Below, piece after piece: positions 351 through 63,330 of a stretch of DNA of 64,000 bases (positions within the stretch are counted from its first letter, which is position 1; each line of letters begins with the position of its first letter). The notes beneath the pieces are model-generated. The model saw only the letters and a program-made list of their open reading frames with translations. It was not told where the DNA came from and searched no databases. Both the position numbers and the translations under genes were made by a program. Source of the DNA: Glycera tridactyla (lineage: Eukaryota); the NCBI GenBank assembly GCA_965644265.1, contig OZ286471.1, forward strand, positions 46,934,001-46,998,000. Direction: 5' to 3'.

Positions 351-524
351 ATGGTTGCTATATACCTACAGTGGGTGGAACTGCCAATGGTGCTAGCTGT
401 GTCTTTCCATTTTTCTACGGAGGTGACAAATACTGGCAATGTACTGTCGTGAAGAACAACAATCAGGCATGGTGTTCTACAACTACCTTCTATGATGTTG
501 ACAAAAAATGGGGCAATTGTTTAG
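351..524 (+). CDS. FN2 exon, array unit 1
   Basis: 174 nt, ccag|...|gtaggc; DGCYIPTVGGTANGASCVFPFFYGGDKYWQCTVVKNNNQAWCSTTTFYDVDKKWGNCL. Confidence 0.9.
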
Positions 525-3500
525 GTAGGCAAGTTGGTAATAGACTGCTTGTTTTGTTGTGAACTCAACTTGTTTTCATGGATTTTCATTTCATACTGAT
601 TGTGCCATGAATATATTGAATTTGTGATGCACGTCAATCTTGACCTGAAGTTTGTGAGTTGATTCCGAAGATTCAGAGAGTATCTTCGAAGCAGTCCTGC
701 ATGGCACTGATAAGTAACTGAGATATCTGTAACCGGAACATTCTTACATCCGATTGTTGATTGTTACTCAATTCAACAGTGTGTGATTATGATATGTAGA
801 ATTTCGTTAAAGCAATTTACAACTGTCAAATTGAATTGCACATTCACCAATTGACTATTTCCTGCATACTGCCTGCTCTACATTTTCCTAGATCTCAAAT
901 GTGGCGAATCCACCCTTGTTGCATCAACATTAGTAACAGAGGCATCCTCATCGGCATCACCCAGGCCATCCATACTTCCCACACAGCAAGTCACTCTACC
1001 AGGTAATATACCTCTGGCAGCTATATCATGAAGTTTCTGGCCATTCTCTAAAGGCATTAGGTGATTTTATACGAATGCAAACCCATACTACATCTCTCAC
1101 AAAAAAGATTGCTTGTCGCTTCTGTAACTGCATGATCTGGAATTGCCATTTGGAGCCTGTTATCCAAAAATGCACTAGTTCATAAGTGATGGTTAATATC
1201 TCTGGAATGTCACTGAGGTGAATTGGTCACCAATAATGACCAATGTCTGTCTGTAATTGGTCGCATATTCTTCCCTCCTCTTCTAAACAGTATTTACTCA
1301 GCACTCCCTTTGATCTACAATATTTTGGAATTGGATACACTGTATCATCCAACATTATGTACTTCAATCTTGAGAAGCCATTTAGTATCTCCGCAATACT
1401 TCATGCTTCAAACAGACCGCTTTTTTGGATTAGTTGAAGAATATTGTCCAAAACATATGTAGTTCTCCCCTTTAGGAATTTCAGGCAATCAATTGCTCCT
1501 AACTCGCTCGATTTATCAGTTTCACTTTCTACAGAAAATACAACTCGCTCGATTTATCGGTTTCACTTTCTACAGAAAATACAACCATCACAGATTGCAT
1601 GGACTCCATTGCCATCTCCATGATATATTTCATGGGTTAAATCACTGCATTTTTCAGATGGTTGCTATATACCTACAGTGGGTGGAACTGCCAATGGTGC
1701 TAGCTGTGTCTTTCCATTTTTCTACGGAGGTGACAAATACTGGCAATGTACTGTCGTGAAGAACAACAACCGGGCATGGTGTTCTACAACTACCTTCTAT
1801 GATGTTGACAAAAGATGGGGCAATTGTTTAGGTAGGCAAGTTGGTAAAAGACTGCTAGGCTCGTTGTGAACTCAACTTGTTACTGTGAATTTTAATTTCA
1901 TGCTGAGTGTGCCATGAATGTATTGAGTTTGTGATGCACATATATCTGGACCTGAAGTTTGTGAGTTGATTCCGAACGTTCAGAGAGTATCTTTGAAGCA
2001 GTCCTGCATGGCACTGATGATTAACTGAGATAATGGAAATCGAAACATTCTCACATCCGATCGTTGATTGTTACTCGATTCAACAGTGTGTGATTATGAT
2101 ATGTAGAATCTCATTGAAGCAATTTGCAACTGTAAAATCGAATTGCACATTCACCAGTTGACCATTTCCTGCATACTGCATGCTCTACATTTTCCTAGAT
2201 CTCAAATGCAGCGAATCCACCCTTGTTGCATCAACATTAGTAACAGAGGCATCCTCATCGGCATCACCCAGGCCAACAATACTTCCAACACGGCAAGTCA
2301 CTCTACCAGGTAATATACCTCTGGCACCTATATCATGAAGTTTCTGGCCATTCTCACAAATGCATCAGGTGATAATATACGAACGCAAACCCATATTACA
2401 TCAGTCAAAAAACAGATTGTTCGCCTCTCCTGTGACTGCATGATCTGGAATTGCCATGTTGAGCCTGTTATCCAAAAATGCACTAGTTCATAAGTGAAGG
2501 CCAATGTCTCTCGAATGTCACTGAGGTGAATTGGTCACCAATGATGACCAATGTCTATGTGTAATTGGTCGCAGATTCTTCCCTCCTCTTCCAAACAGTA
2601 TTCACTCGGCACTCCCTTTGATCTACAACATTGTGGAATTGGATAAACTGTATCATCCAACATTATGCACTTCTATCTTGAAAAGCCATTTTGTATCTCC
2701 GCAATACTTCATGCTTCAAACAGACCGCTTTTTTGGATTGGTTAAAGAATATTGTCCAAAACATGTGTAGTTCTCCCTTCTCGGAATTTCAGGCAATCAA
2801 TAGCTCCTAACTCTCTCGATTTATCAGTTTCACTTTCTACAGAAAATACAACTTGCTCGATTTATCAGTTTCACTTTCTACAGAAAATACAACCATCACA
2901 GATTGCATGGACTCCATTGCCATCTCCATGATATATTTCATGGGTTAAATCACTGCATTTTTCAGATGGTTGCTATATACCTACAGTGGGTGGAACTGCC
3001 AATGGTGCTAGCTGTGTCTTTCCATTTTTCTATGGAGGTGACAAATACTGGCAATGTACTGTCGTGAAGAACAACAACCGGGCATGGTGTTCTACAACTA
3101 CCTTCTATGATGTTGACAAAAAGTGGGGCAATTGTTTAGGTAGGCAAGTTGGTAATAGACTGCTAGGTTCGTCGTGAACTCAACTTGTTACTGTGGATTC
3201 TAATTTCATGCTGAGTGTGCCATGAATATATTGAATTTGTGATGCACATATATCTGGACCTGAAGTTTGTGAGTTGATTCCGAAAGTTCAGAGAGTATCT
3301 TTGAAGCAGTCCTGCATGGCACTGATGATTAACTGAGATAATGGTAACCGAAACATTCTCACATCCGATCGTTGATTGTTACTCGATTCAACAGTGTGTG
3401 ATTATGATATGTAGAATCTCATTGAAGCAATTTGCAACTGTAAAATTGAATTGCACATTCACCAGTTGACCATTTCCTGCATACTGCATGCTCTACATTT

Positions 3501-39500: not shown

Positions 39501-39614
39501 CCTGTAATTTATCTGATTCAATGCATGTACAGGGACCATTTATATCTTGCCATCATTTAGTTTCATATTTAGTTGTTTTGTATCTACAGGAATCAATATG
39601 GTCATGTAATGAAC

Positions 39615-39665
<51 letters not shown>

Positions 39666-51600: not shown

Positions 51601-54600
51601 ACAGCCAGTGTATAACATTCATTCGTGGGAGGCCATGGTGTGCTACGACAGTTTTCTTTGAGTTTGATCAGCTCTGGGGCTACTGTGAAGGTATGAAATC
51701 TTGGGTATGCTCATCTCACTATATTCTGTCCAATATTGCTCATGTAATATGGCATGTGCATATTTCATGCCATCAAATATCTCAATCAAAGGATTCTTTT
51801 CTTGGAGATGAAATACCTCTGGCAACTGAACACCAATCTTTTTGTTGATGGTCTCTGTGCCTGGACATGACAGATTGATCAGCTTGGCAATCAAGTCACA
51901 TGTCATGGGCACAACATTGTCACGTCATTGACATAATGTGGATCAGACTGAATGTATTTCCGTCAATATTTGTCACAGCGACGAATATAGTTTGGTATGT
52001 AACTCTTGGACACACATATATATGCCTTTTCACAGAATTTGCGAGTTCATCGAAAGAGTTGTGTGTCAATGAATTGAACGAATTGTATAGATTTTTCACG
52101 GTAATCTTCAAACCTGATTTTGAATAGTCTACCTTCTTCCAAAGATGATTTGCTCTTATAGGGGTGCATTTATATGACAAAACTGCCCGATTTGTATCAT
52201 CTGAATTTTCATATTTTAAGTGATGGCCACCATACTCGCCATGAAACCGGTGTGAAATTGACATATTTATTCTGCTGTGTTGAAATATACAATTCAACTT
52301 CATTGTGGCCACAGTTTGAGTCACCAGAGATGTCAATCCCATGCATATTTGTAAGGTTAGAGTGAAAAATGTACTCATAATGTCGGGACTCAGTCAACGT
52401 TGAAGACGTTGCTGATTTATATGATGATCTACAGAAGAACACATAATTGTCTTGATTGTTGTGTACAACTCCAGTCTTCCTGGTTCAACCTATGATCATA
52501 CAATTTCAGCCAGATGCCAGTGTATGCTATTTCATTCGTGATATTCACTGATCAAGTAGCAATGTTTTCCAAGGCTGCCAATGTCATAGTATTTATATTT
52601 CATTCAGATCGTGTTTGCCCCTCGTCTACATCTGCTGCACCATCTCCGACTACTCCGTCACCATTCCTGAATGTCCCACCTGGTTGTCAGGTTCGAACAA
52701 CAGGTGGTAATGCTAATGGGGACTATTGCTACTTCCCTTTTGTCTACAAATCTGACCGCTATGATTCATGTACCATGAGAAACCATGACCAGTACTGGTG
52801 CTCAGTGACACAGTTCTACTCTGTGGGAAGTCGTTGGGGAAATTGCTTAGGTAAGTTGTGCATCAAAATGATCAGAGTGATGGTTTCTCCTCTTACTGAT
52901 CATACGGTTTGTTTGTTTAATTGTTTGTTTGAGTTTAACGTCAGGGGATGGCATGGTTGTCAGTTGGCTGGGTGGGTGGTCTGTTGATGGTTCATATTTC
53001 AATAATTATCAACATCTTATGTCATGCCCAAATCACTTTATTGTCAATCTCACTGAGCGAAACCTCAAACATATTCCTACTGAAGATTGATATTGATAGT
53101 CATCGTAGTTGTTGTTTGCAGTTAGTTGTTTAGCAGAACCACCTCAAAATATCAAGTCAACAGCTAGAATATCTCTCTAATGCACTGCTTCCATGATGTT
53201 GTTCATTGGTTTGATATCTGATACATTTTGCTTTGACATGCCGGATAAAATAGCATTCAATATTTGTATCAATCAAATCATGCAAATTTCATTCTAAAAT
53301 GAAAGTAAATATGAATATAATATTACCACTGGCTACATAAGGATGTCATGCTTGCCTTGATATAGAAGTTGTATGCGAAAGTGAGACCACCAAACAAACT
53401 GTATCAACCACAACCCGAGCCAGGCCAACTCCTACAACGACCACTACACGCCAACCATATACACAAGGGAACTGCTACATACGTACGACAGGTGGACGTG
53501 CCGGGGATTCACAATGCTACTTCCCTTTTGTATACAAGAGTGTTACATACTATGAATGTACAGTGGTGGATAATAATGGCATTCCATGGTGCTACACGAC
53601 CAGCGATTACAAGAATGATCACCTGTGGGGCAATTGTCTAGGTTAGTGGTCTTCACTTCTCTAATCAAAAGGACATACATACGATTTGTATCACACCTGT
53701 CAGCAGCATATCGATATTGCAAAGTCTTCAGTCATAAAGATGTAACATTTCTGATCTCTGTCATATATTATCTATCGACTACCATATTCATCAGATATGA
53801 TTCCATGTCATTTTGCCAGTGGAGAATACGCGTTGCATGTATTACTGAATACTAACTCAAGTTTTGTTTTTGACACTAATTAGTGCTCATATTTCAAGTA
53901 TATATGGCATTACCACATGCATTTCTACTTGTGAATATGATATGTACCAGGGTCATTTCAATTCGATCCCACTCCATTCCACAGATCAAGTTTGCAGTAC
54001 GTCATCATCTGTATCTGAAGTCACATCCATCCACGCTACAAGTATACCAGGTACTCATTATTTTGTCGAAGGCATAGACTCCAAATCGTCTATAGCTTCA
54101 GCACCAGTGCACTGGACAATTTCGCTGTTCCACCATTTTCCAATAATATGCCAACGACTAGTCTGTGAATATAATACCTGCTTCATCTGTTGAGAGAGAC
54201 GAACAGACAGACAGATAGGCAGACAAACAGACAGACAGACAAACAGACAGACAGATATAGACAGGCAGCAGCCAGGCAGATAGACAGAAATATGCATGGT
54301 TGAGAGCATGGATAGTTGAATTTATCGATGAAAAGGAGCATTGGATGAAAGAAAAGAGCAGAACCACCCAATGAACCACAAGAATAGACAGATTGACAAA
54401 CAGAAAAAAACATTTATTGAGATACTTATGTGTCTCAGATATTAACAGGCACACATTGTGGTGTTGCTGACTAATAATCTACACATGAACTTCCATATTG
54501 ATGGAATGTATCCTACAATATGCCGGTTCATGACAACCATCAAACGCGTTTACAGATGGGTGCTATATTCGGACTTTTGGCGGAACATCGAATGGGGGTC

Positions 54601-57600
54601 GTTGCTTTATCCCATTCTTCTATGATGGAAAATTTCATGAGCAGTGTATCTCATTGGATCGCAGACAACCATGGTGTTCTACAACAGCATTTTTCGATAT
54701 AGATCAGCTGTGGGGATATTGTCTAGGTAATGTATACATTCCGTGAATATTTGCCTACAGATTACTTTCCCCAGAGCAACATTTTCGTCACAGCCATGTA
54801 TTGAGATTCCTCATCACCAGATGATAACATGCCTCCATGATACGTACCATTTCTGTCGACTAGACTTGCTGTCATTCTTCACAATTTTGTGATTCTACAC
54901 TTTTGTGCAACATTTGATACTGAGCAAAGGGACCACTTGCAAATACCTGAATTACGTCATTGGAGATGATGCTGAAAATATGGAGAAAATCGGATCAGCA
55001 TTTTCTAGCTATCTGGGTTATGTGCAATCGCTCTGAGTACGGAAATAGAGCATACCTAAACTGATTGACACTGATATGTCTCCTCATGTATATAACTTTT
55101 TTCTCAGATCGAGTGTGCCCAGCCCCAACAACGCCAGCATTACCAACAACCACAGAACCAGCTTTTCTCAATGTTCCATCGGGATGCTTCGTTAGAACAA
55201 CTGGTGGTACAGCAAATGGCGACTATTGCCAGTTCCCCTTCACCTACAAATCACAACGCTATGATACATGCACGAAGAAAAATCATGATCGGTATTGGTG
55301 CTCAGTTGTACGGATTTATTCCATTGGCCAACGATGGGGAAATTGCCTAGGTATCAATTGATTGATTATTCCCGATTTCGATGCACGTACATAGGGAAAC
55401 GTAAATGTGGCCACATAGTCAATAATCATATTGGCCATTTATTCTGAACATGTAACTGCTATTGTATCATCATGCTTTGGACTGAACTGGCCATTGAATC
55501 ATTGTGACTAAGGGGAGTCAGTATTTGTTGATTATTTCTTCTTCTACAAACACAATTCATGGGAGAAAGAGGGAGATAGAGAAAGAGTGAGAGAAAGAGT
55601 GAGAGAGAGATAGAGAGATGACTAAAGATGTATAATCGAAGGATGCAGTATCAAGAGTGGAGTATCTTCTGTGAACTTCTGATTTCTCGTTGTATTTATT
55701 TATAGATCTATGTTTGCGCCATACATATTCTGTATGTTTAAGGCAATAGATGAACATGACTTTCCTATGATCGGCCACTCTACCATGAATATATCTCAAT
55801 TCCGGCATTTCCTTCGTGAGATACCTAAATGAGATATTGTGTTTTATTGTGACAGATGTTGTTTGCGAAACTACAGAAAAGACAACAACTACAAAACGTC
55901 CAACTACCACACCCACAACCACGACTGAACCCTACACACAAGGAGATTGTTCTATCTCTACGTTTGGTGGAACCGCTGGTAACTCACAGTGCTCGCTTCC
56001 ATTTGAGTACAAGGGTGTGACTTATTATGACTGCACGACGCGAGATAATGATGGCGTGCGATGGTGCTACACAACTGCTAACTACAGAAATGATCATTTA
56101 TGGGCAAATTGCTTAGGTGTGTCATTATATAGACTCAGCACTACCATTCGTGTTATCTTGCCCCCCCCCCCCCCCTTCATGAATTAATCAAAAGACTTTC
56201 TCCCTCTATTCAGAAAATTATAAACCATTCGATACAATTCACCAATCATGATATAAATGGATGCACACTAATCGGTACTGAAAGTGTACCCGAGTATTTT
56301 TATCACCCGCATGAAGACAGTGATTGCAAGTACGCATGAGACATTCATACTGAGATCAAACATCGAGAAATTCATGTCAGTGTGTATTCATTCAATGAAA
56401 TGGTTATTTCGCTCAATTCACCGAAGTCATGACTCGGATCTTCCCTATCTGTGGAACATGGCCGGGAATTTCTATGAAGTCAGCCCACTACAAAACTTAT
56501 GCGATGCATCTCTATCGACTCGTTATGCTTTTTGCAATCAATGTTTGTATTATGGCTCATGAGAACGTGTTGCAGGATTCATTTGTGTGCGTCTCCCAGT
56601 GTTTTGTCAGATATGTCACAGTCATCACTGTATGTTCGAATACCTGTCTATTTTAATTGGCCACTCGAGAAAAAGAAGTTTCAGAGTAGGCAATTTGTGA
56701 GGCCTATCTCAAATCACATCAGTAGAAATCGATTGGTTTTTCTATCCTGTCAAGGAATGCCAACTGAACCAAATTTAGTCCATTCGTAGATTTATTTAAT
56801 TTCCATTTTGATCTCATGAACTGTTTATGTTCACCTGGTGATGGACATGTGTCATATATATATCGCGGAAATCTTAACTACTCAACAATTTAGCTGATTA
56901 GATGTCAATCCGAGATGTGGACCCATCATCAATGAGAAATGACATTTTATCTGAATGACAGCTTGTAATCTGATTTCGTCAGATTGGCGTCAGTGTTCGT
57001 ACTATACATACTACGGGAGATTGGTGGTTTATTGCCAATTACTANNNNNNNNNNNNNNNNNNNNNNNNNNNNNNNNNNNNNNNNNNNNNNNNNNNNNNNN
57101 NNNNNNNNNNNNNNNNNNNNNNNNNNNNNNNNNNNNNNNNNNNNNNNNNNNNNNNNNNNNNNNNNNNNNNNNNNNNNNNNNNNNNNNNNGAGTAAAACAT
57201 TTGACCCATCATGGCACAGTGTAAGGGGAATATGTGAAGCACTCAGATTTGATCACATGTTTATCAATTTTCTTGTCATTGCATGCTGCATGAGTGGTCT
57301 GTCTTGCCAACTTATGTATGTCTTAGAACGATCTATTTCATTAAACTCCTCACACTTTGCCTGCTTGGAAAAACCTGAAGCTCATCCTCATCAGGTCCAA
57401 ATGCCTGAGTCATTCAAAGATACTTACCCTTCACCAATTTCTACTCAGCGAATGTTATTCCCAAGTTTCTCATATGCACCATGACTTTATATTAACATGA
57501 AAACACATGGCGAATGTTATTACCAGGTTTCTCATATGCATCATGACTCATTTTACCAACAGATGTAGTTTGTTCCACCTCGTCGACTGCACCGGCAACT

Positions 57601-60600
57601 CTATCTTCAATGTTGACAGCAGACATATCGGCAACACCCATTCCAGGTAGACATAGTACCCTCTATGTACTGATGCCAACAAGCATAGTGACAGAATGAT
57701 ACTACTATGAGATATCAGATGTATGCAATGCCCAGCGACAGATCAGTTTTGCATGAAGTTCATTGATGACGTGGTTGATATGCAGCTGATATATAAATAT
57801 ATGTATGGGAGGGCATTTAATCATGGCAGGACACATACATTGACACACGACGACATATAAACACACAAAACACAACACAAAAAAGAGTTTTCATCGCGTA
57901 TACTGTATGTAAATTACATGCATACATGCATGAATTCATGAGTCTTACCTAGTTTCATGTAAATTCAGATTGCATTCTACATATCATGCGATGATCAGAT
58001 GGATACTATTGTATATGCTATGATATACTTTCACGCATCAGGCCATGAAACGCTTGCTTTTTTTGCAGATGGATGCTTTATTCAGACGTTGGGAGGGACA
58101 GCAGCGGGAGGGCACTGCACTTTTCCATTCTTTTACAAAGGAATATTTCATAACCAGTGCATACGGTTGGATCGCAGACAACCTTGGTGTTCAACTACTG
58201 CCTTTTTCGAGTTGGACCAAATGTGGGGATATTGTTTAGGTAATACTTGGCTTCTGTCTATATTCTTCAACATACTGAAGAGATATCAGGTTTGCAAACA
58301 GTTCAATATTTATCTCAATGCAATTAGGAAATGGCTTCAGTCATCATATACCAGTGTCCTGTTCTTCAGTCGTTCGATTTATAGTCTTGCTTCTATGTTT
58401 GTTGATCCTGAAAAAGGGTCTGAATTGTAAATAGCATTATAATACCAGTATCGAAAGTATCAGTACTTCTCATTATATCTTCATACTTTTGAATATGATA
58501 TTCGTATTTGCAGTTGTACATAAAGTTTATGAGGCTATGAAATGACCAAAGTTGATGGGATTGTAGTGAGTTGTACCTGATAATCATGATCTCAAGTGAA
58601 AGCTCAATATGGAGAAAGCTCAAATATATTTAATTTCATATCTTTTTCATTAGATCTTGTGTGCGTCTCATCTACAACAACAGAGGCACCAGCTTCGACG
58701 TTGCCAGCCTTTCTCAATGTTCCAGCTGGTTGCTTTGTTAGAACAACTGGTGGTAATGCGAATGGCGATTATTGTCACTTTCCCTTCGTCTACAAATCGG
58801 AACGCTATGATACATGTATCAAGCTAAATCACGATCGGTATTGGTGCTCGGTTGCATCAATATATGCTGTGGGCCAACGATGGGGAAATTGCCTAGGTAA
58901 CGATTCATCACTTGTGGTCTCACAATATTCATCTAATATCTGTCACACCCTGCAGTGCAAATGCATATCCTGGTCAATATATCATACTTCATGATCTCCA
59001 GATGGATCACAAATATCTAATTTTGATCTCTGAATGGATCCGAAGTAATCACCTATGAATATTATAGCACCGGACCTACATAATGGCAAAAGTTACTATT
59101 ATCCCCATTCCTTCGTGGATTGGAATCGATATTTAGATTTTGATTCATCACTCATTCGCAACAAGTCTCTCTTGATTACACACTGATTTAGATATTGTTT
59201 GATAAGTCTCAGTGGGAATGGTCGTTACATTGTATAATCATACTCTTTCATTTTGATAGATGTTATATGCGAGACGACAGATAGAACAACCACAACAAGT
59301 AAACGTCCTACTACCACACCGACGACCACTTCTGAACCGTATACACAAGGAGACTGTTTTATACCTACAACTGGTGGTTCTGCTGGTAACTCACGGTGCT
59401 ATTTCCCTTTTGTGTACAAGGATGTGACATATTATGATTGTTCAACAAGGAATAATGATGGTGTGCGATGGTGCTACACATCGCCTACCTACAGAAATGA
59501 TCGTCTTTGGGGCAACTGCTTAGGTGCGTGACAATTCAGGAGGGGAGCAATTCTGATTGAATGCATGATTTGACTATACATACGAGCACACATCAACGTG
59601 AACACATATACCCATACCTACCTACCTGCTCACCTATGTATCCACCTGCTTGCCCACCTACCGAATGATATACATACATGCATACGGATATACGTACGCA
59701 CGTACGGAAAGATGGGTGGGCGTACCAATGAATGCACCGAAGGACAGAAGCACACATGCGTTCACAAATAGTGGTACAGGAAGCTGTTTCATATCAGATA
59801 AATACGCTGCACTCTATCGCCTCTGTTCCCAATCATCAGTATACAATATCTAACCTGCCACATGTCACTGGAGCATGCTTTGTAAGTCTCAAGTGTCTGC
59901 ATTGGATAACCTGTAACGAAATCATTGCCTGGTTTTCACCAGATTGGTGTTGCTTCTACACGCATTACATTACAATTCGCACATCTCTATTCATAATCAC
60001 ATGCTTTCATGGCACACTGCCTTCATCCAGCTTCAGCTTTGAAGAGGGTCGGAGCATGATTGAGAGCTCTCCGACTTCCCAGAAATACGTATGATCTCAA
60101 AACATGATTCGCGACAGAAGAAAGCAGCATACTTGAGTCTCTCTTCATTAGATTGAGAATCTTGCCTTCGGGCTATGGTGTCAGAGATATATGTATATTT
60201 TGCCGAGGTCAAACGGCATAGTGGATCCATAGATCATCCCCTACCTATACTTATAATTATAAATGGCACTCACCAAAAGTACATAGATATGAGAGTTGCT
60301 AATTCATGCACTGATTATAAGATTTTCTCCTTCCTAGACTCACATATGTCGCTGCTGCTTATCAGTGAACTGTCAGATCATCAACTGTCTCATGACAGGA
60401 TACTGCTGGTCAGTTGCATGAATGCCATGAATGAACACAAATCATCATACACAGGTCGCATTTGTTTCTCACCGACAAATCACAGCACCTATATACACAT
60501 GAATATGCTCACACAAATTGCCAATACATAATCAGGCCCGAACACACGTATTTCGAATGAGCATCTCCGATGTGTTTTCAACAGGCGAAGATCAGACAGG

Positions 60601-63330
60601 TATGCAACATATCATTTGAAGCGCTCCTCGCCAACCATCTGAAGAACTGGACTTATCTTCATATACCAAATTCGTGATTATATGAATTGTATTGTACAAT
60701 GACGTTTTTCAGACTGCAAGATCTCGATCCCCTTGTCCAAGATGAATGGCTTTGGTTCAAAAGCTATCCAATGTAGTTTTTGAGAGCAGTCGAATCCGCC
60801 TCTGAACACTGAATCAGTGACAAAGAGAAGGGTGATATAGTCACTAATGCAGGGTCATGGTACAGTGTAGCAGGGGTGATCCAGCACTTGAGGGATGTGA
60901 TAACTGCTATCTGCATGTCGCATGAGCACTAAGTGAATGATTATCGTACCTTGTCCTGTTTGCATTCATCTGATGTGCAGGAACATCTGTACATCTGTGT
61001 CGATTATGCTTAACCAAAGTTATCCTTTGAAGTCAATTCAAGCATTTGACCCATCGTGGCACGGTGTAAGGGAATATGTGAAGCACTCAGATTTGATCAC
61101 ATTTTTATCAATGTTCTTGTTATTGCATGAGTGGTCTGTCTTGCCAACTTATGTCTGTCTTAGAACGATCTATTTCATTAAGCTCCTCACACTTTGCCTG
61201 CTAAGAAAATTCGGAGGGTCATCTTCATCAGGTCCATATGCCTTAGTCATTCAAACATACTTCCCTTCACCAATTTCTACTCAGCGAATGTTATTACCAG
61301 GTTTCTCATATGCATCATGACTCATTTTTTCGACAGATGTAGTTTGTTCCACCTCGTCGACTGCACCGGCAACTCTATCGACTGCAGACATATCGGCAAC
61401 ACCCATTCCAGGTAGACATAGTACCCTCTATGTACTGATGCCAACAAGCATAGTGACAGAATGATACTACTATGAGATATCAGATGTATGCAATGCCCAG
61501 CGATAGATCAGTTTTGCATGAAGTTCATTGATGGCGTGGTTGATATGCAGCTGATATATAAATATATGTATGGGAGGGCATTTAATCATGGCAGGACACA
61601 TACATTGACACACGACGACATATAAACACACAAAACACAACACAAAAAAGAGTTTTCATCGCATATATTGTATGTCAATTACATGCGCACATGCATAAAT
61701 TCATGAGTCTTACCTAGTTTCATGTAGATTTAGATTGCATTCTACATATCATGCGATGATCAGATGGATACTATTGTATATGCTATGATATACTTTCACG
61801 CATCAGGCCATGAAACGCTTGCTTTTTTTGCAGATGGATGCTTTATTCAGACGTTGGGAGGGACAGCAGCGGGAGGGCACTGCACTTTTCCATTCTTTTA
61901 CAAAGGAATATTTCATAACCAGTGCATACGGTTGGATCGCAGACAACCTTGGTGTTCAACTACTGCCTTTTTCGAGTTGGACCAAATGTGGGGATATTGT
62001 TTAGGTAATACTTGGCTTCTGTCTATATTCTTCAACATACTGAAGAGATATCAGGTTTGCAAACAGTTCAATATTCATCTCAATGCGATTAGAAAATGCC
62101 TTCAGTCATCATATACCAGTGTCCTGTTCTTCAGTCGTTCGATTTATAGTCTTGCTTCTATGTTTGTTGATCCTGAAAAAGGGTCTGAATTGTAAATAGC
62201 ATTATAATACCAGTATCGAAAGTATCAGTACTTCTTATTATATCTTCATACTTTTGAATATGATATTCGTATCTGCAGTTGTACATAAGATTTATGAGGC
62301 TATGAAAAGTGGTTGAAGAAGTGCCAAAAATTTTGAAATGACCAAAATTGACGGGGATCGTAGTGAGTTGTACCTGATAATCATGATCTCAAGTGAAAGC
62401 TCAATATGGAGAAAGCTCAAATATATTCAATTTCATATCTTTTTCATTAGATCTTGTGTGCGTCTCATCTACAACAACAGAGGCACCAGCTTCGACGTTG
62501 CCAGCCTTTCTCAATGTTCCAGCTGGTTGCTTCGTTAGAACAACTGGTGGTAATGCGAATGGCGATTATTGTCACTTTCCCTTCGTCTACAAATCGGAAC
62601 GCTATGATACATGTATCAAGCTAAATCACGATCGGTATTGGTGCTCGGTTGCATCAATATATGCTGTGGGCCAACGATGGGGAAATTGCCTAGGTAACGA
62701 TTCATCACTTGTGGTCTCACAATATTCATCTAATATCTGACACACCCTGCAGTGCAAATGTATATTCTGGTCAATATATCATAATTCATGATCTCCAGAT
62801 GGATCACAAATATCTAATTTTGATTTCTGGATGGATCCGAAGTAATCACCTATGAATATTATAGCACCAGACATACATGATGGCAAAAGTTGCTATTATC
62901 CCCATCCCTCCGTTGATTGGAATCAATGATATTTAGATTTTGAGTCATCACTCATTGACAACAAACCCATGTGATATCTCGATTACACACTGATTTAGAT
63001 ATTGTTTGATTAGTCTCAGTGGGAATGGTCGTTACATTGTATAATCATACTCTTTCATTTTGATAGATGTTATATGCGAGACGACAGATAGAACAACCAC
63101 AACAAGTAAACGTCCTACTACCACACCGACGACCACTTCTGAACCGTATACACAAGGAGACTGTTTTATACCTACAACTGGTGGTTCTGCTGGTAACTCA
63201 CGGTGCTATTTCCCTTTTGTGTACAAGGATGTGACATATTATGATTGTTCAACAAGGAATAATGATGGTGTGCGATGGTGCTACACATCGCCTACCTACA
63301 GAAATGATCGTCTTTGGGGCAACTGCTTAG
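351..63330 (+). CDS. Partial multi-exon gene (80 exons in window) for a giant secreted-type protein with 47 FN2-like modules and S/T/P-rich linkers; 5' and 3' ends outside window
   Basis: Every exon listed below has an AG acceptor and GT donor, phase 1-1 and length 3n. Joined frame is 12,717 nt without stop. FN2 motif C-x-[FI]PF-x-Y...C...WC-x4-[YF]...WG-x-C recurs 47 times. Confidence 0.88.
892..1002 (+). CDS. S/T/P linker exon, unit 1
   Basis: 111 nt, ctag|...|gtaat; DLKCGESTLVASTLVTEASSSASPRPSILPTQQVTLP. Confidence 0.85.
1503..1584 (+). repeat. 41-bp intronic tandem duplication (CTCGCTCGATTTATCAGTTTCACTTTCTACAGAAAATACAA x2), also in the introns after units 2, 4, 7, 9 and 15
   Basis: Accounts for the ~1308 versus ~1266 bp unit lengths. 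Confidence 0.9.
1658..1831 (+). CDS. FN2 exon, unit 2
   Basis: 174 nt, AG/GT, phase 1-1. Confidence 0.9.
2199..2309 (+). CDS. Linker exon, unit 2
   Basis: 111 nt, AG/GT, DLKCSES...VTLP. Confidence 0.85.
2966..3139 (+). CDS. FN2 exon, unit 3
   Basis: 174 nt, AG/GT. Confidence 0.9.
3507..3617 (+). CDS. Linker exon, unit 3
   Basis: 111 nt, AG/GT. Confidence 0.85.
4232..4405 (+). CDS. FN2 exon, unit 4
   Basis: 174 nt, AG/GT. Confidence 0.9.
4773..4883 (+). CDS. Linker exon, unit 4
   Basis: 111 nt, AG/GT. Confidence 0.85.
5540..5713 (+). CDS. FN2 exon, unit 5
   Basis: 174 nt, AG/GT. Confidence 0.9.
6081..6191 (+). CDS. Linker exon, unit 5
   Basis: 111 nt, AG/GT. Confidence 0.85.
6806..6979 (+). 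CDS. FN2 exon, unit 6
   Basis: 174 nt, AG/GT. Confidence 0.9.
7347..7457 (+). CDS. Linker exon, unit 6
   Basis: 111 nt, AG/GT. Confidence 0.85.
8073..8246 (+). CDS. FN2 exon, unit 7
   Basis: 174 nt, AG/GT. Confidence 0.9.
8614..8724 (+). CDS. Linker exon, unit 7
   Basis: 111 nt, AG/GT. Confidence 0.85.
9381..9554 (+). CDS. FN2 exon, unit 8
   Basis: 174 nt, AG/GT. Confidence 0.9.
9922..10032 (+). CDS. Linker exon, unit 8
   Basis: 111 nt, AG/GT. Confidence 0.85.
10647..10820 (+). CDS. FN2 exon, unit 9
   Basis: 174 nt, AG/GT. Confidence 0.9.
11188..11298 (+). CDS. Linker exon, unit 9
   Basis: 111 nt, AG/GT. Confidence 0.85.
11955..12128 (+). CDS. FN2 exon, unit 10
   Basis: 174 nt, AG/GT. 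Confidence 0.9.
12496..12606 (+). CDS. Linker exon, unit 10
   Basis: 111 nt, AG/GT, DLQCSES variant. Confidence 0.85.
13221..13394 (+). CDS. FN2 exon, unit 11
   Basis: 174 nt, AG/GT, KSNN variant. Confidence 0.9.
13762..13872 (+). CDS. Linker exon, unit 11
   Basis: 111 nt, AG/GT. Confidence 0.85.
14488..14661 (+). CDS. FN2 exon, unit 12
   Basis: 174 nt, AG/GT, GGSANG variant. Confidence 0.9.
15029..15139 (+). CDS. Linker exon, unit 12
   Basis: 111 nt, AG/GT. Confidence 0.85.
15754..15927 (+). CDS. FN2 exon, unit 13
   Basis: 174 nt, AG/GT; following intron carries the 5.2-kb insertion. Confidence 0.9.
15947..21118. mobile_element. 5,172-bp non-coding insertion with TGTAA...TTACA termini and 4-bp TSD (ATAG); probable large solo LTR or non-autonomous element
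   Basis: Empty site in other units reads GGTAATAGACTGC. Here it reads GGTAATAG|TGTAATCC...GGCGTTACA|ATAG ACTGC. Unit spacing 6443 = 1267 + 5172 + 4. No long ORF and no internal LTR pair seen. Confidence 0.8.
21471..21581 (+). CDS. Linker exon, unit 13
   Basis: 111 nt, AG/GT. Confidence 0.85.
22197..22370 (+). CDS. FN2 exon, unit 14
   Basis: 174 nt, AG/GT. Confidence 0.9.
22738..22848 (+). CDS. Linker exon, unit 14
   Basis: 111 nt, AG/GT. Confidence 0.85.
23464..23637 (+). CDS. FN2 exon, unit 15
   Basis: 174 nt, AG/GT. Confidence 0.9.
24005..24115 (+). CDS. Linker exon, unit 15
   Basis: 111 nt, AG/GT. Confidence 0.85.
24771..24944 (+). CDS. FN2 exon, unit 16
   Basis: 174 nt, AG/GT, TTSFY variant. 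Confidence 0.9.
25312..25422 (+). CDS. Linker exon, unit 16
   Basis: 111 nt, AG/GT. Confidence 0.85.
25942..26115 (+). CDS. FN2 exon, unit 17
   Basis: 174 nt, AG/GT. Confidence 0.9.
26483..26593 (+). CDS. Linker exon, unit 17
   Basis: 111 nt, AG/GT. Confidence 0.85.
27210..27383 (+). CDS. FN2 exon, unit 18
   Basis: 174 nt, AG/GT. Confidence 0.9.
27751..27861 (+). CDS. Linker exon, unit 18
   Basis: 111 nt, AG/GT. Confidence 0.85.
28476..28649 (+). CDS. FN2 exon, unit 19
   Basis: 174 nt, AG/GT, DERW variant. Confidence 0.9.
29017..29127 (+). CDS. Linker exon, unit 19
   Basis: 111 nt, AG/GT. Confidence 0.85.
29739..29912 (+). CDS. FN2 exon, unit 20
   Basis: 174 nt, AG/GT. Confidence 0.9.
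30280..30390 (+). CDS. Linker exon, unit 20
   Basis: 111 nt, ttag|...|gtaat. Confidence 0.85.
31006..31179 (+). CDS. FN2 exon, unit 21
   Basis: 174 nt, AG/GT. Confidence 0.9.
31547..31657 (+). CDS. Linker exon, unit 21
   Basis: 111 nt, AG/GT. Confidence 0.85.
31810..32915. repeat. Sequence unrelated to the array unit, probably interspersed-repeat relics
   Basis: Replaces most of the array-type intron; contains AAAGGTCAAAAG and CAAGGTCA motifs and a poly-C tract; family not identified. Confidence 0.3.
32979..33152 (+). CDS. FN2 exon 22 (diverged edge copy of array exon)
   Basis: 174 nt; DGCYIPTVGGNADGARCVFPFFYRGDKYWQCTVIKNDNKAWCSTTSFYDVDKRWGNCL. Confidence 0.9.
33467..33587. mobile_element. 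~120-bp MITE-like foldback
   Basis: Imperfect ~42-bp inverted repeat AAGCAAGAATATATGGCCGTGAGGTAAAATGCAATACCAAAC / GTTCGGTATTGCGTTTTTACTTCACGGACATATATTCTTACT. Confidence 0.55.
33776..34009 (+). CDS. Fused linker+FN2 exon (FN2 23)
   Basis: 234 nt; DQLCSTTVSTTLGISSSAAPIVCYIPTTGGNGNGMQCVIPFIYNG...WCSITANYDEDKLWGICL; donor gtaagt. Confidence 0.88.
34885..34998 (+). CDS. Linker exon
   Basis: 114 nt; DVICDESTSGPSTSPSISSPSTTPVLTALPTQAPSTLP. Confidence 0.82.
35005..35195. other. N run (191 nt), intronic
   Basis: Undetermined bases. Confidence 0.95.
35925..36098 (+). CDS. FN2 exon 24
   Basis: 174 nt; DGCYIPTFGGNAKGNSCAFPFFYKGNKYWECITIDNGNAPWCSTTTFYDVDKRWGNCL (missed by ORF track). Confidence 0.88.
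36432..36542 (+). CDS. Linker exon
   Basis: 111 nt; DIICDGTTIVQSTFVTGAGTTTSDPTALPTGRPVTIP. Confidence 0.82.
37813..37986 (+). CDS. FN2 exon 25
   Basis: 174 nt; DICFIPTSGGTANGAACTFPFFYRGEKYWQC...WGNCL. Confidence 0.88.
   Translation: MYVLYQQVEGLQMGLPVHSLFSIVVKNTGSVQRYEMMVPCGAQRQLFMTGTSNGGIV
38628..38741 (+). CDS. Linker exon
   Basis: 114 nt; DIICDESTVVPSTMVTDTQSTKTPGPTALPTQAPSTLQ. Confidence 0.82.
39172..39345 (+). CDS. FN2 exon 26
   Basis: 174 nt; DGCYIPTSGGTAAGAFCAFPFYYRGERYDSC...DKLWGNCL. Confidence 0.88.
39618..39662. repeat. (AT)n microsatellite
   Basis: Uninterrupted AT dinucleotide run. Confidence 0.95.
41456..41689 (+). CDS. Fused linker+FN2 exon (FN2 27)
   Basis: 234 nt; GPICQMTSVPTAALTSTVIPSDCYIPTTGGNGNGLKCYIPFVY...DEDKLWGNCL; paralog of 33776..34009. 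Confidence 0.88.
42001..42087 (+). CDS. Linker exon
   Basis: 87 nt; DERCGTSSAPTSVTPKDGSTSTERYSTLS. Confidence 0.78.
42481..42654 (+). CDS. FN2 exon 28
   Basis: 174 nt; DGCYIPTIGGTAAGAPCEFPFYYMGDKYWTCILGGSQARLWCSTTTFYDVDGQWGNCL (frame missed by ORF track). Confidence 0.88.
   Translation: MAVTFPRLVELQLGHHANSPSTTWVINTGHVFLAEVKLDYGVQLQHSTMLMDNGATV
43016..43132 (+). CDS. Linker exon
   Basis: 117 nt; GLVCGETTVIKSTQKTTTISSSPPSSQTVLPTQPPVTLP. Confidence 0.82.
43482..43655 (+). CDS. FN2 exon 29
   Basis: 174 nt; DGCYIPTYDGNADGAACEFPFYYEGDKYWQC...DRKWGNCL. Confidence 0.88.
   Translation: MGATSPHMMEMQMGLHVNFPSTTRVTNTGNALLSRMEIYHGAQQQHSMVLIENGAIV
43769..43903. other. N run (135 nt), intronic, flanked by AT/CT simple repeats
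   Basis: Undetermined bases. Confidence 0.95.
44117..44227 (+). CDS. Linker exon
   Basis: 111 nt; DLVCDGSTIIPSTSTVIPSSSQSVRTEFPTQPPATLP. Confidence 0.82.
44903..45070 (+). CDS. FN2 exon 30 (two codons shorter)
   Basis: 168 nt; DGCFIPTTGGTANGAVCVFPFIYRGIEYRECTTERNEGIPWCSTTALYDKQWGNCL. Confidence 0.88.
   Translation: MDVSSPQLGELQMVLCVFSHLFTVALNIGNVLPSETRVYLGVQRLHYMTNSGETV
45392..45553 (+). CDS. Linker exon with internal 60-bp duplication
   Basis: 162 nt; DVVCGE(STVVRSTLVTDVTSQSTALP)x2 SQSPVTLP. Confidence 0.82.
45409..45530 (+). repeat. Perfect 60-bp tandem duplication inside linker exon
   Basis: TCAACAGTTGTTCGATCC...CGCTCCCA repeated with 60-nt period. Confidence 0.95.
46094..46267 (+). 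CDS. FN2 exon 31
   Basis: 174 nt; EGCVIPTSGGTADGAACVFPFYYDGKKYWEC...DKRWGNCL. Confidence 0.88.
46661..46774. mobile_element. ~114-bp MITE-like element with 25-bp terminal inverted repeats
   Basis: AAATGAATCAGGAAACTGGACTCAC (46661..46685) versus GTGAGTCCAGTTTCTTGATTCATTT (46750..46774), 24/25 complementary. Confidence 0.6.
46956..47228 (+). CDS. Fused linker+FN2 exon (FN2 32)
   Basis: 273 nt; DLVCGEDTTAPSTPSTVPSTQTSSGPAGTETFLPPNCIIPTSGG...WCAVTWDYDQDELWGNCL. Confidence 0.88.
   Translation: MWYVGKILRPPPLHPPCLQLRPAVVQLAPRHSCHRIALFQHQEEQGWVKTAFFLSSTEIVNSLHAPRSDMIGRGVLSHGTMTKMNSGEIV
47480..47619 (-). mobile_element. Short SINE-like element, copy 1
   Basis: (GGTT)n-CTGGTTTAACGTC...CAAGGTGCCATTT; flanks TGTCATTG / TGTCAATG resemble a degenerate TSD; paralog at 48133. 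Confidence 0.5.
47806..47892 (+). CDS. Linker exon (cassette 1)
   Basis: 87 nt; DLVCDTSTTSAGTMIPTATAKSVSSTNLP. Confidence 0.8.
48133..48280 (-). mobile_element. Short SINE-like element, copy 2, with 9-bp TSD
   Basis: CATCAGCGG at 48124..48132 and 48281..48289; the paralogous intron at ~51435-51455 lacks the insert. Confidence 0.65.
48364..48534 (+). CDS. FN2 exon 33 (cassette 1)
   Basis: 171 nt; DGCFITTAGGTAGGAFCTLPFFYNGVSYSQCITFIRGRPWCATTVFFEFDQLWGYCE. Confidence 0.88.
49499..49741 (+). CDS. Fused linker+FN2 exon 34 (cassette 1)
   Basis: 243 nt; DRVCPSSTSAAPSPTTPSPFLNVPPGCQVRTTGGNANGDYCYFPFVYKS...SRWGNCL. Confidence 0.88.
50245..50520 (+). CDS. Fused linker+FN2 exon 35 (cassette 1)
   Basis: 276 nt; EVVCESETTEEIVSTTTQARPTPTTTTTRQPYTQGNCYIRTTGG...NDHLWGNCL. 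Confidence 0.88.
   Translation, partial: KWYVKVRPQKKLYQPQLKPGQLLQRPLHANHIHKGTATYVRQVDVPEIHSATSLMFTRVLHTMNVQWWIIMAFHGATQPAITRMITCGAIV
50867..50932 (+). CDS. Linker exon (cassette 2)
   Basis: 66 nt; DQVCSTSSSLPEVTSIQATTIP. Confidence 0.78.
50960..51005. repeat. (GACA)n tetranucleotide tract
   Basis: Imperfect GACA run; larger paralogous tract at ~54195-54290. Confidence 0.8.
51520..51690 (+). CDS. FN2 exon 36 (cassette 2)
   Basis: 171 nt; paralog of 48364..48534. Confidence 0.88.
52608..52850 (+). CDS. Fused linker+FN2 exon 37 (cassette 2)
   Basis: 243 nt; same protein as 49499..49741 with synonymous changes. Confidence 0.88.
53366..53641 (+). CDS. Fused linker+FN2 exon 38 (cassette 2)
   Basis: 276 nt; EVVCESETTKQTVSTTTRARP...NDHLWGNCL. 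Confidence 0.88.
   Translation, partial: KLYAKVRPPNKLYQPQPEPGQLLQRPLHANHIHKGTATYVRQVDVPGIHNATSLLYTRVLHTMNVQWWIIMAFHGATRPAITRMITCGAIV
53985..54050 (+). CDS. Linker exon (cassette 3)
   Basis: 66 nt; DQVCSTSSSVSEVTSIHATSIP. Confidence 0.78.
54195..54290. repeat. (GACA)n-like tract
   Basis: Imperfect tetranucleotide run. Confidence 0.8.
54556..54726 (+). CDS. FN2 exon 39 (cassette 3)
   Basis: 171 nt; DGCYIRTFGGTSNGGRCFIPFFYDGKFHEQCISLDRRQPWCSTTAFFDIDQLWGYCL (frame missed by ORF track). Confidence 0.88.
55108..55350 (+). CDS. Fused linker+FN2 exon 40 (cassette 3)
   Basis: 243 nt; DRVCPAPTTPALPTTTEPAFLNVPSGCFVRTTGG...QRWGNCL. Confidence 0.88.
   Translation: MECAQPQQRQHYQQPQNQLFSMFHRDASLEQLVVQQMATIASSPSPTNHNAMIHARRKIMIGIGAQLYGFIPLANDGEIA
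55560..55620. repeat. GA-rich simple repeat
   Basis: Imperfect (GA)n / (GAGAAAGAGT)n. Confidence 0.75.
55856..56116 (+). CDS. Fused linker+FN2 exon 41 (cassette 3)
   Basis: 261 nt; DVVCETTEKTTTTKRPTTTPTTTTEPYTQGDCSISTFGG...NDHLWANCL. Confidence 0.88.
57045..57189. other. N run (145 nt), intronic
   Basis: Undetermined bases. Confidence 0.95.
57563..57646 (+). CDS. Linker exon (cassette 4)
   Basis: 84 nt; DVVCSTSSTAPATLSSMLTADISATPIP. Confidence 0.8.
58069..58239 (+). CDS. FN2 exon 42 (cassette 4)
   Basis: 171 nt; DGCFIQTLGGTAAGGHCTFPFFYKGIFHNQC...DQMWGYCL. Confidence 0.88.
   Translation: MDALFRRWEGQQREGTALFHSFTKEYFITSAYGWIADNLGVQLLPFSSWTKCGDIV
58654..58896 (+). CDS. Fused linker+FN2 exon 43 (cassette 4)
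   Basis: 243 nt; DLVCVSSTTTEAPASTLPAFLNVPAGCFVRTTGG...QRWGNCL. Confidence 0.88.
59260..59523 (+). CDS. Fused linker+FN2 exon 44 (cassette 4)
   Basis: 264 nt; DVICETTDRTTTTSKRPTTTPTTTSEPYTQGDCFIPTTGG...NDRLWGNCL. Confidence 0.88.
61337..61411 (+). CDS. Linker exon (cassette 5)
   Basis: 75 nt; DVVCSTSSTAPATLSTADISATPIP (in-frame 9-nt deletion versus 57563..57646). Confidence 0.8.
61834..62004 (+). CDS. FN2 exon 45 (cassette 5)
   Basis: 171 nt; matches 58069..58239. Confidence 0.88.
   Translation: MDALFRRWEGQQREGTALFHSFTKEYFITSAYGWIADNLGVQLLPFSSWTKCGDIV
62451..62693 (+). CDS. Fused linker+FN2 exon 46 (cassette 5)
   Basis: 243 nt; matches 58654..58896. Confidence 0.88.
63067..63330 (+). CDS. 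Fused linker+FN2 exon 47 (cassette 5)
   Basis: 264 nt; matches 59260..59523. Confidence 0.88.

What the first reader, a model, noticed from the sequence alone, without database searches (positions are those of the whole stretch)
351..63330. Giant FN2 bead-on-string protein: at least 47 FN2-like modules on mucin-like tethers
Seen: 80 in-frame exons give 4,239 codons containing only FN2-like modules and S/T/P linkers, with no start, stop or other domain in 64 kb. Established: characterised FN2 proteins carry few modules (fibronectin 2, MMP-2/9 3, BSP/PDC-109 2, ELSPBP1 4, mannose-receptor family 1). FN2 binds collagen/gelatin or choline phospholipids. Inference: this is an extended, O-glycosylated, highly multivalent extracellular protein (mucus, adhesive, matrix or gamete coat) of a type I do not recognise as a named gene.
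Basis: partly seen in the sequence, partly recalled or inferred. Interest (0 to 1): 0.88.

Follow-up and report, generated by a model that had tools for sequence, protein, structure and literature searches.

The report
Giant FN2-bead, mucin-linker gene slice
This 64-kb window is an internal piece of a very large animal gene. It strings together 47 intact collagen-binding-type (fibronectin type II) beads on short sugar-bearing spacers, more than 2.5 times as many as in any predicted protein I found in public data.

Summary
It has 47 FN2 modules (Pfam PF00040), with none on the minus strand and none decayed. Between them lie spacers of about 33 residues, 52% Ser/Thr/Pro.

The exons are under purifying selection. 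In paralogous units they diverge 0.1-4.6% against 5-26% for introns, and dN/dS is about 0.2. The three N gaps all fall in predicted introns.

Every exon is phase 1-1, so "in frame" is automatic. The one-gene reading therefore rests on three points: the unbroken alternation of exon types, a sixth cysteine that each module takes from the next exon (46 of 46), and the absence of any start, stop or other domain. No transcript evidence could be obtained.

The design is not unique. Uncharacterised proteins with 16-18 FN2 modules exist, including one with the same six-cysteine bead plus linker unit. The scale is what stands out.

The scan flagged the same array in five neighbouring windows and on one other scaffold. 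Together these notes suggest about 300 modules, which I could not verify.

The most likely role is a secreted, O-glycosylated, highly multivalent binder of collagen-type ligands. This is a new variant of a known kind.

The parts
351..63330 (+). Internal slice of one transcription unit: 80 phase 1-1 exons, 4,239 codons, open at both ends. The full exon list is in notebook entry 4.
351..31657 (+). Zone 1: young tandem array of 1,266/1,308-bp units. It holds 21 near-identical FN2 exons, each followed by a 111-nt linker exon. Units differ by 0.5-8% and show higher-order (two-unit) structure.
351..524 (+). Representative FN2 exon of 174 nt. It begins D-G-C-Y-I-P-T-x-G-G, with an extra Cys 13 residues before the first FN2 Cys. 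It ends C-L plus one base of the next codon.
892..1002 (+). Representative linker exon of 111 nt. It supplies the sixth Cys (C-L-D-L-K-C across the junction), then an S/T/P-rich spacer ending T-L-P.
15947..21122 (.). A 5.18-kb insertion in an intron, 19 nt after the donor of exon 15754-15927. Its ends are TGTAA...TTACA, it carries a 4-bp target duplication ATAG, and it has no ORF with a Pfam hit. Probably a decayed mobile element.
32979..47892 (+). Zone 2: 11 old, diverged FN2 modules, three of them fused to their linker in one exon, with separate linker exons of 87-162 nt. Synonymous sites are saturated between modules.
45408..45530 (+). Exact 60-nt tandem duplication inside linker exon 45392-45553, which lengthens that spacer by 20 residues.
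48364..63330 (+). Zone 3: five triplet units of 2.5-3.8 kb, each with three distinct FN2 types (A stand-alone, B and C fused to their linkers) plus a short linker exon. Triplets 1/2 and 4/5 are recent duplicates.
59260..59523 (+). Representative fused exon: V-I-C-E, a Thr-rich spacer, then a C-type FN2.
35005..35195 (.). Assembly gap 1, in the intron after linker exon 34885-34998.
43769..43903 (.). Assembly gap 2, in the intron between FN2 exon 43482-43655 and linker exon 44117-44227.
57045..57189 (.). Assembly gap 3, in the intron between exon 55856-56116 and linker exon 57563-57646. Its right flank is collinear with the paralogous intron.

Best explanation
The window is an internal 64-kb piece of one very large gene for a secreted beads-on-a-string glycoprotein. 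Each bead is a fibronectin type II module of the gelatinase/fibronectin (collagen-binding) kind. It probably carries a third, kringle-like outer disulfide between a Cys 13 residues upstream and a Cys four residues after the last FN2 Cys; the downstream Cys is encoded on the next exon. Beads are separated by spacers of about 33 residues rich in Ser/Thr/Pro, which are probably O-glycosylated and extended. The product would bind its ligand with very high avidity through many weak sites. The ligand is most likely collagen or denatured collagen in a matrix, cuticle or mucus layer. Shown here: the exon anatomy, the module family, module intactness and purifying selection. Inferred: one transcript, secretion, glycosylation, disulfide pairing and ligand.
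For: There are 47 of 47 intact FN2 modules on one strand, none decayed, and they match Pfam fn2 at E 1e-12 to 2e-17. All 80 exons have AG/GT and phase 1-1 and give 4,239 codons without a stop. Exon types alternate without a break, F-l-F-l and so on. The pre-FN2 Cys is invariant, and 46 of 46 junctions make C-[L/E]-x3-C with the next exon, so each FN2 exon depends on its downstream exon. In database homologues the upstream and downstream Cys co-occur (odds ratio 5.1). In P0002 the first module has neither Cys and the last has both. Selection is clear. Diversity in zone 1 is 0.009 for FN2 exons, 0.019 for linker exons and 0.059 for introns. Triplets 4/5 differ at 1 of 678 exon sites against 76 of 1,446 intron sites. 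Triplets 1/2 diverge 4.6% in exons against 25.6% in introns, with no exon indels. dN/dS is about 0.2 and dS is saturated between old modules. The nearest solved relatives are the collagen-binding FN2 modules of MMP-9, MMP-2 and fibronectin, with the match running into the strand before the first Cys. The aromatic positions P19, Y22, W40 and W53 are invariant and F20 is conserved in at least 90%. Linkers average 33 aa, 39% S/T and 52% S/T/P. No other domain and no start exon was found. A complete smaller relative, P0031, has signal peptide, FN2 x6 and PAN x4 with Thr-rich linkers on one transcript-like contig. That matches earlier notes of PAN/Apple modules in the next window.
Against: There is no transcript or peptide evidence. 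A protein search with one exon found no fragments from this species. Because all exons are phase 1-1, reading-frame continuity does not separate one gene from several, or constitutive from cassette splicing. Start and stop lie outside the window. The three gaps could hide more units. The spacers are short for a classical mucin domain. Ligand specificity of FN2 cannot be read from sequence, since collagen, choline lipids and other ligands are all known for the family. The organism is unknown; earlier scan notes guess an annelid, which I did not verify.
Confidence: 0.6

Rival explanations
1. The array is a cluster of several tandem genes, each with a handful of FN2 modules, whose first and last exons I failed to recognise.
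For: Known multi-FN2 genes have at most 18 modules. The salmon louse has over 200 FN2 copies spread over more than 80 genes (PMC7201535). Phase 1-1 exons make frame continuity uninformative. Zone boundaries near 32 kb and 48 kb could be gene boundaries.
Against: No ATG-initiated signal-peptide-like exon with a phase-1 donor is convincing. No FN2 exon has an in-frame Met upstream of the domain. No exon ends in a stop. The F-l alternation and the cross-exon Cys pair run straight through the zone boundaries. Intron sizes at the boundaries (1,321 nt and 471-577 nt) leave little room for a terminator plus promoter plus first exon.
Confidence: 0.15
2. It is one gene, but the symmetric exons are used as cassettes, so mature proteins carry far fewer and variable numbers of modules.
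For: All 80 exons are phase 1-1. Skipping any FN2+linker pair keeps both the frame and the six-Cys pattern. Giant modular genes often splice this way (general knowledge).
Against: The 21 zone-1 modules are nearly identical, so choosing among them would produce no diversity. All have equally good splice sites. All 47 modules, not a subset, are kept intact by selection.
Confidence: 0.2
3. The anatomy is the same, but the beads bind something other than collagen. Candidates are choline phospholipids (as in seminal BSP proteins), microbial surfaces or glycans. The protein would then be a coat, an immune lectin-like trap or an adhesive.
For: The FN2 pocket that binds gelatin also binds phosphorylcholine in PDC-109, and that family is also hit (1h8p). 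Louse FN2 proteins come from exocrine tegumental glands and were proposed as surface coat or lubricant.
Against: The best sequence matches are gelatinase and fibronectin modules, including the N-terminal strand. This is only a weak indicator of ligand.
Confidence: 0.25
4. The array is an assembly artefact or a dead, decaying repeat.
For: There are three assembly gaps, and zone 1 units are highly similar.
Against: Units differ by 0.5-8% in a structured pattern. Introns diverge 5-26% while exons stay at 0.1-4.6%. None of the 47 modules carries a stop or frameshift.
Confidence: 0.02

Closest known systems
Apolipoprotein(a) (LPA) kringle-IV array
   Same: It is a beads-on-a-string secreted protein. 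Small disulfide-closed modules are repeated tens of times and separated by spacers of about 30 residues rich in S/T/P, which are O-glycosylated. Each module plus linker is encoded by two exons within a near-identical genomic tandem unit. The last two Cys of a kringle are spaced C-x4-C as here. These apo(a) and kringle features are recalled from the literature, not tested here.
   Different: The module here is FN2 by sequence, with no Kringle hit even at E<=10. The upstream Cys is 13 rather than about 21 residues before the next Cys. No protease domain was seen. The genomic unit is 1.3 kb against 5.5 kb. The array also contains old, diverged module types.
Collagen-binding FN2 modules of MMP-2/MMP-9 and fibronectin
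   Same: They belong to the same Pfam family and are the best solved matches (E 3e-50 to 1e-31 for whole chains). The aromatic pocket positions are conserved. There is one module per symmetric exon; I recall 174-bp FN2 exons in the gelatinase genes, and 28 of 34 stand-alone FN2 exons here are also 174 nt.
   Different: Those proteins have 2-3 modules, four Cys per module, no mucin spacers, and sit inside enzymes or fibronectin.
P0002, an uncharacterised 1,552-aa protein on a metagenome-assembled eukaryotic contig (ENA ERZ22147071)
   Same: It has 16 FN2 modules with the same unit: upstream Cys, FN2, downstream Cys, then an S/T/P linker, with a period of about 95-105 aa. It aligns collinearly with the spliced model over about 1,590 columns at 31% identity.
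   Different: It has one third as many modules, encoded in a single intron-less 4.7-kb ORF with its own stop. Its downstream Cys spacing is x7 rather than x4.
Other predicted multi-FN2 proteins: Sardina pilchardus XP_062381919.1 (17), Branchiostoma belcheri KAI8499649.1 (18 FN2 + SEA + mucin region), the prawn proteins XP_064112099.1 and XP_068216971.1 (17-18), and salmon-louse FNII gland proteins
   Same: They are extracellular proteins made mostly of FN2 repeats, several with S/T-rich regions. The louse genes are expressed in exocrine tegumental glands.
   Different: They have at most 18 modules. The Sardina modules are packed back to back without spacers. The amphioxus protein is a membrane mucin with SEA domains. 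None has been functionally characterised.
P0031 (975 aa, Logan SRR14460572): signal peptide, FN2 x6, PAN x4
   Same: It has six-Cys FN2 modules and Thr-rich linkers. The FN2 modules are followed by PAN/Apple modules, the order that earlier notes report for this locus and the next window.
   Different: It is small and complete on a 3.1-kb contig, and its organism is unknown.
Drosophila Dumpy (giant apical-matrix protein with hundreds of EGF/DPY modules)
   Same: This is a functional analogy only: a megadalton chain of small disulfide-rich modules that ties epidermis to cuticle (recalled from the literature).
   Different: It uses unrelated module families, and no ZP or transmembrane part was seen here.

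Membership tests
Fibronectin type II domain (Pfam PF00040) | Match to the family HMM above its gathering score | tested here: met
   All 21 representatives scanned (of the 47 modules) match PF00040. The five whose scores are on record give 46.7-63.3 bits against a cut-off of 22.2.
Fibronectin type II domain (Pfam PF00040) | Four Cys in the C1-C3, C2-C4 pattern, with conserved F-P-F, Y, W-C and W-G aromatic positions | tested here: met
   C16, C30, C41, C56, P19, Y22, W40 and W53 are invariant in the alignment of 21 representatives (A1). Actual disulfide pairing was not tested.
Fibronectin type II domain (Pfam PF00040) | Binding of gelatin/collagen or choline ligands in the aromatic pocket | not testable with these tools
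   This needs recombinant modules and binding assays.
Kringle (Pfam PF00051) | Match to the Kringle HMM | tested here: not met
   No Kringle hit for any of 21 modules, even at E<=10. Kringle clusters appear only as a distant second set in the Atlas feature search.
Kringle (Pfam PF00051) | Six Cys with an outer C1-C6 disulfide closing the module | tested here: inconclusive
   The two extra Cys are present in all modules (46/46 junctions) and co-occur in homologues. Their pairing is inferred, not shown.
Mucin-like (PTS) protein | Long regions rich in Ser/Thr/Pro that carry dense O-glycans | tested here: inconclusive
   45 spacers average 33 aa, 39% S/T and 52% S/T/P. The composition fits, but each stretch is short and glycosylation cannot be tested.
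Single giant gene (one transcription unit) | Spliced transcript joining all exons, with one start and one stop | not testable with these tools
   No RNA data were available. No start, stop or foreign exon lies in the window. Both ends run off the window.

The most novel reading that the evidence does not exclude
This window and its neighbours form one gene of about 370 kb or more. Earlier scan notes report 43, 66, 82 and 48 further FN2 modules upstream, and 26 FN2 plus 17 PAN/Apple modules downstream. The product would carry roughly 300 kringle-clamped FN2 beads and exceed 25,000 residues, making it one of the largest animal proteins. It would be a micrometre-long collagen-binding mucin that could run along, or cross-link, giant cuticle collagen. 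Its six-Cys module with kringle-like C-x4-C spacing could be a surviving intermediate between kringles and FN2.
Probability: 0.3. Interest if true: 0.85.

Novelty: new variant of a known kind. Interest (0 to 1): 0.72.

Why it matters
FN2 is the classic collagen- or choline-binding mini-domain and has been studied only in proteins with one to four copies. A selected gene with 47 copies in one window, and possibly several hundred in all, on glycosylated spacers would be an extreme natural experiment in multivalent matrix binding. It is also an FN2 counterpart of apolipoprotein(a). It offers a testable candidate for how a mucus or cuticle layer is tied to collagen in an invertebrate. Its six-cysteine module bears on the long-discussed kringle-FN2 relationship. 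The young 1.3-kb array is also a likely site of copy-number variation.

Tried and rejected
- **Kringle identity:** rejected by Pfam.
- **Decayed or pseudogene modules:** none found.
- **Other domains in the longest non-FN2 ORFs on both strands:** none.
- **Signal-peptide first exons with a phase-1 donor:** 18 weak candidates, none convincing.
- **Spliced fragments of this gene in public protein data:** a word-indexed search with exon 59262-59522 gave nothing. The species seems absent from that collection in the 48-152 aa range.
- **An annotated protein with 40 or more modules:** none among 1.84 billion representatives. The top hit has 17 modules. Dinoflagellate-like hits with 27-29 'stretches' have only 4-7 true fn2 hits, plus TSP1.
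- **Continuity across gaps by paralogue collinearity:** informative only for the right flank of gap 3.
- **Literature:** searches for giant FN2 proteins or FN2 mucins in invertebrates found only the salmon-louse FNII genes and a planarian nidovirus with FN2 next to a Thr-rich region. Ozhogina et al. 2001 was not available. A search to confirm the 174-bp gelatinase exons found nothing useful.
- **Structure prediction:** not run. The tool returns no coordinates, so it could not test the third disulfide. The sixth Cys lies on another exon, so no single reference covers a full module.

Full report
**What is in the sequence**

The window is eukaryotic DNA with about 40% G+C. A pattern scan finds 47 fibronectin type II (FN2) cores, all on the plus strand, between 398 and 63326. 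I built an HMM from 21 representative modules and searched every stop-to-stop fragment in six frames. It gives 47 full-length hits on plus, none on minus, and no partial or decayed copies. All 21 representatives match Pfam fn2 (PF00040). E-values for the five individually listed modules run from 3e-12 to 2e-17, and none matches Kringle even at E<=10.

**Exon model**

- Every FN2 core sits in an open segment bounded by a conserved acceptor and a donor placed right after C-L. One base is carried over on each side, so the exons are phase 1-1.
- I enumerated all phase 1-1 AG...GT open segments and chained them. This recovers a second exon class between the FN2 exons. It starts x-[L/I/V]-x-C-[G/S/D]-E-S/T, is rich in Ser/Thr/Pro and usually ends T-L-P.
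- After curating two donor choices the model has 80 exons: 34 FN2, 33 linker and 13 with linker and FN2 fused. That is 12,717 nt or 4,239 codons with no stop.
- The exon order is strictly F-l-F-l, with fused exons standing in for l+F.
- The first exon needs an upstream partner and the last has a donor, so the unit runs off both edges of the window.

**The N gaps**

All three gaps lie in predicted introns, and the exon order is regular across each. Because each exon is a self-contained symmetric cassette, an error in gap length cannot break the frame. Physical continuity cannot be proven from the window. Only the right flank of gap 3 is collinear with the paralogous intron. Extra units could be hidden in a gap.

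**Is it real coding sequence?**

Yes, on four lines of evidence.

- In the 19 aligned units of the 5' array, nucleotide diversity is 0.009 in FN2 exons, 0.019 in linker exons and 0.059 in introns.
- Paralogous triplet units show the same pattern. Triplets 4/5 have 1 mismatch in 678 exon sites against 76 in 1,446 intron sites. Triplets 1/2 diverge 4.6% in exons against 25.6% in introns. There are no indels in exons and hundreds of gap columns in introns.
- dN/dS is about 0.2 in both halves, and synonymous sites are saturated among the old modules.
- Units of the young array differ by 0.5-8% in a structured, higher-order pattern, so it is not a collapsed or duplicated assembly artefact.

**Anatomy: three zones**

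- Zone 1 (351-31657) has 21 near-identical FN2 exons with 111-nt linker exons in 1,266/1,308-bp units. One intron is interrupted by a 5.18-kb insertion.
- Zone 2 (32979-47892) has 11 old, diverged modules.
- Zone 3 (48364-63330) has five triplets of three distinct FN2 types.

**The extra cysteines**

A Cys 13 residues before the first FN2 Cys is invariant. In 46 of 46 cases the next exon supplies a Cys that makes C-[L/E]-x3-C. In database homologues the two extra Cys co-occur (odds ratio 5.1). In P0002 the first module has neither and the last has both. This fits an intramodule, kringle-like outer disulfide better than a linker-closing one. The C-x4-C spacing is what I recall for the last two Cys of kringles; I did not test that.

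**Spacers and sequons**

Spacers average 33 residues, 39% S/T and 52% S/T/P. The model contains no N-x-S/T sequon at all, against 14.8 +/- 3.4 expected in shuffles of the 34 non-redundant exon peptides. This is unexplained.

**One gene or several?**

Frame continuity is uninformative here because all exons are phase 1-1. The evidence for one unit is as follows.

- The exon alternation is unbroken across zone boundaries.
- Each FN2 exon depends on the next exon for its sixth Cys.
- No FN2 exon has an in-frame Met upstream of the domain.
- No exon ends in a stop.
- No other domain occurs in any long ORF.
- There is no convincing signal-peptide exon.

No RNA evidence could be obtained, and a protein search with one exon found nothing from this species. 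I put one transcription unit across the window at about 0.8. The full best explanation, which adds secretion and collagen-type binding, I put at 0.6.

**Comparison with what is known**

The nearest solved relatives are the collagen-binding FN2 modules of MMP-9, MMP-2 and fibronectin. Solved chains carry 1-3 modules.

A profile search of 1.84 billion representative proteins gave 5,657 hits. The richest true FN2 proteins have 16-18 modules:

- Sardina pilchardus, 17 modules;
- an amphioxus SEA-mucin, 18;
- two prawn proteins, 17-18;
- P0002, 16.

Hits listed with 27-29 stretches have only 4-7 real fn2 matches, plus TSP1.

P0002 has the same unit as here (upstream Cys, FN2, downstream Cys, S/T/P linker). 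It aligns collinearly with the spliced model at 31% identity, but it is encoded without introns. P0031 is a complete small protein with signal peptide, six FN2 and four PAN domains joined by Thr-rich linkers.

In the salmon louse FN2 is the most expanded domain. Some FN2-only proteins come from exocrine tegumental glands and were proposed as surface coat or lubricant (PMC7201535). So the design is known at small scale and remains uncharacterised. The copy number here is unprecedented in the data I could search. By architecture the best analogue is apolipoprotein(a), and by possible role, giant apical-matrix proteins such as Dumpy. Both comparisons come from memory.

**Earlier notes of this scan**

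The same array was flagged in neighbouring windows: 43, 66, 82 and 48 (one overlapping note says at least 46) FN2 modules upstream, out to about 247 kb, and 26 FN2 plus 17 PAN/Apple modules downstream. It was also flagged on another scaffold. These are unverified leads. If all belong to one gene, the protein would have about 300 FN2 beads. Other notes guess an annelid with a giant cuticle collagen. I could not verify the organism.

**Most likely mechanism**

The protein is probably secreted. Each bead folds independently and is closed by three disulfides, so the chain enters and leaves at one side. The O-glycosylated spacers would hold beads roughly 8-10 nm apart; this is my estimate from 33 residues in extended form. 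Many weak pocket interactions would add up to very high avidity for a repetitive ligand, most plausibly collagen in a matrix, cuticle or mucus interface. The module family, intactness and selection are shown. Secretion, glycosylation, pairing of the extra Cys, the ligand and the tissue are inferred.

**Verdict**

This is a new variant, extreme in scale, of a known but uncharacterised kind. Interest 0.72.

Noticed in passing
whole spliced model, 351-63330: The 4,238-residue model has no N-x-S/T sequon. Within-exon shuffles of the 34 non-redundant exon peptides give 14.8 +/- 3.4, with a minimum of 3 in 2,000. N-glycosylation sites seem to be avoided although S/T are abundant.
   Followed up: partly
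window 15947-21122: A 5.18-kb insertion lies in an intron, 19 nt after a donor site. It has ends TGTAA...TTACA and a 4-bp target duplication ATAG. It has no long terminal repeats, no ORF with a Pfam hit, and is A-rich on the + strand. It is probably a decayed mobile element tolerated in the intron.
   Followed up: partly
window 45408-45530: An exact 60-nt tandem duplication inside linker exon 45392-45553 adds 20 residues to one spacer. It shows how linker length can change.
   Followed up: no
window 351-31657: The young array has higher-order structure. Units of 1,308 and 1,266 bp tend to alternate, lag-2 neighbours are more alike than lag-1 (3.6% vs 5.5%), and some distant units differ by only 0.5-0.8%. 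This suggests recent multi-unit duplication or conversion and probable copy-number variation.
   Followed up: partly
window, 34 stand-alone FN2 exons: 28 of the 34 stand-alone FN2 exons are exactly 174 nt and phase 1-1. I recall the same length for the three FN2 exons of the vertebrate gelatinase genes. If correct, the exon boundaries of this module are very old.
   Followed up: no
L001:10001-14659 (ENA ERZ22147071 ctg30976l): A eukaryote-like 1.09-Mb metagenome contig (37% G+C locally) encodes a 16-module six-Cys FN2 + linker protein in one intron-less ORF. Its organism is unknown.
   Followed up: partly
L002:115-3042 (Logan SRR14460572): A complete 975-aa ORF carries signal peptide, FN2 x6 and PAN x4 with Thr-rich linkers. 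It is a small counterpart of the FN2 + PAN/Apple order that earlier notes report for this locus.
   Followed up: partly
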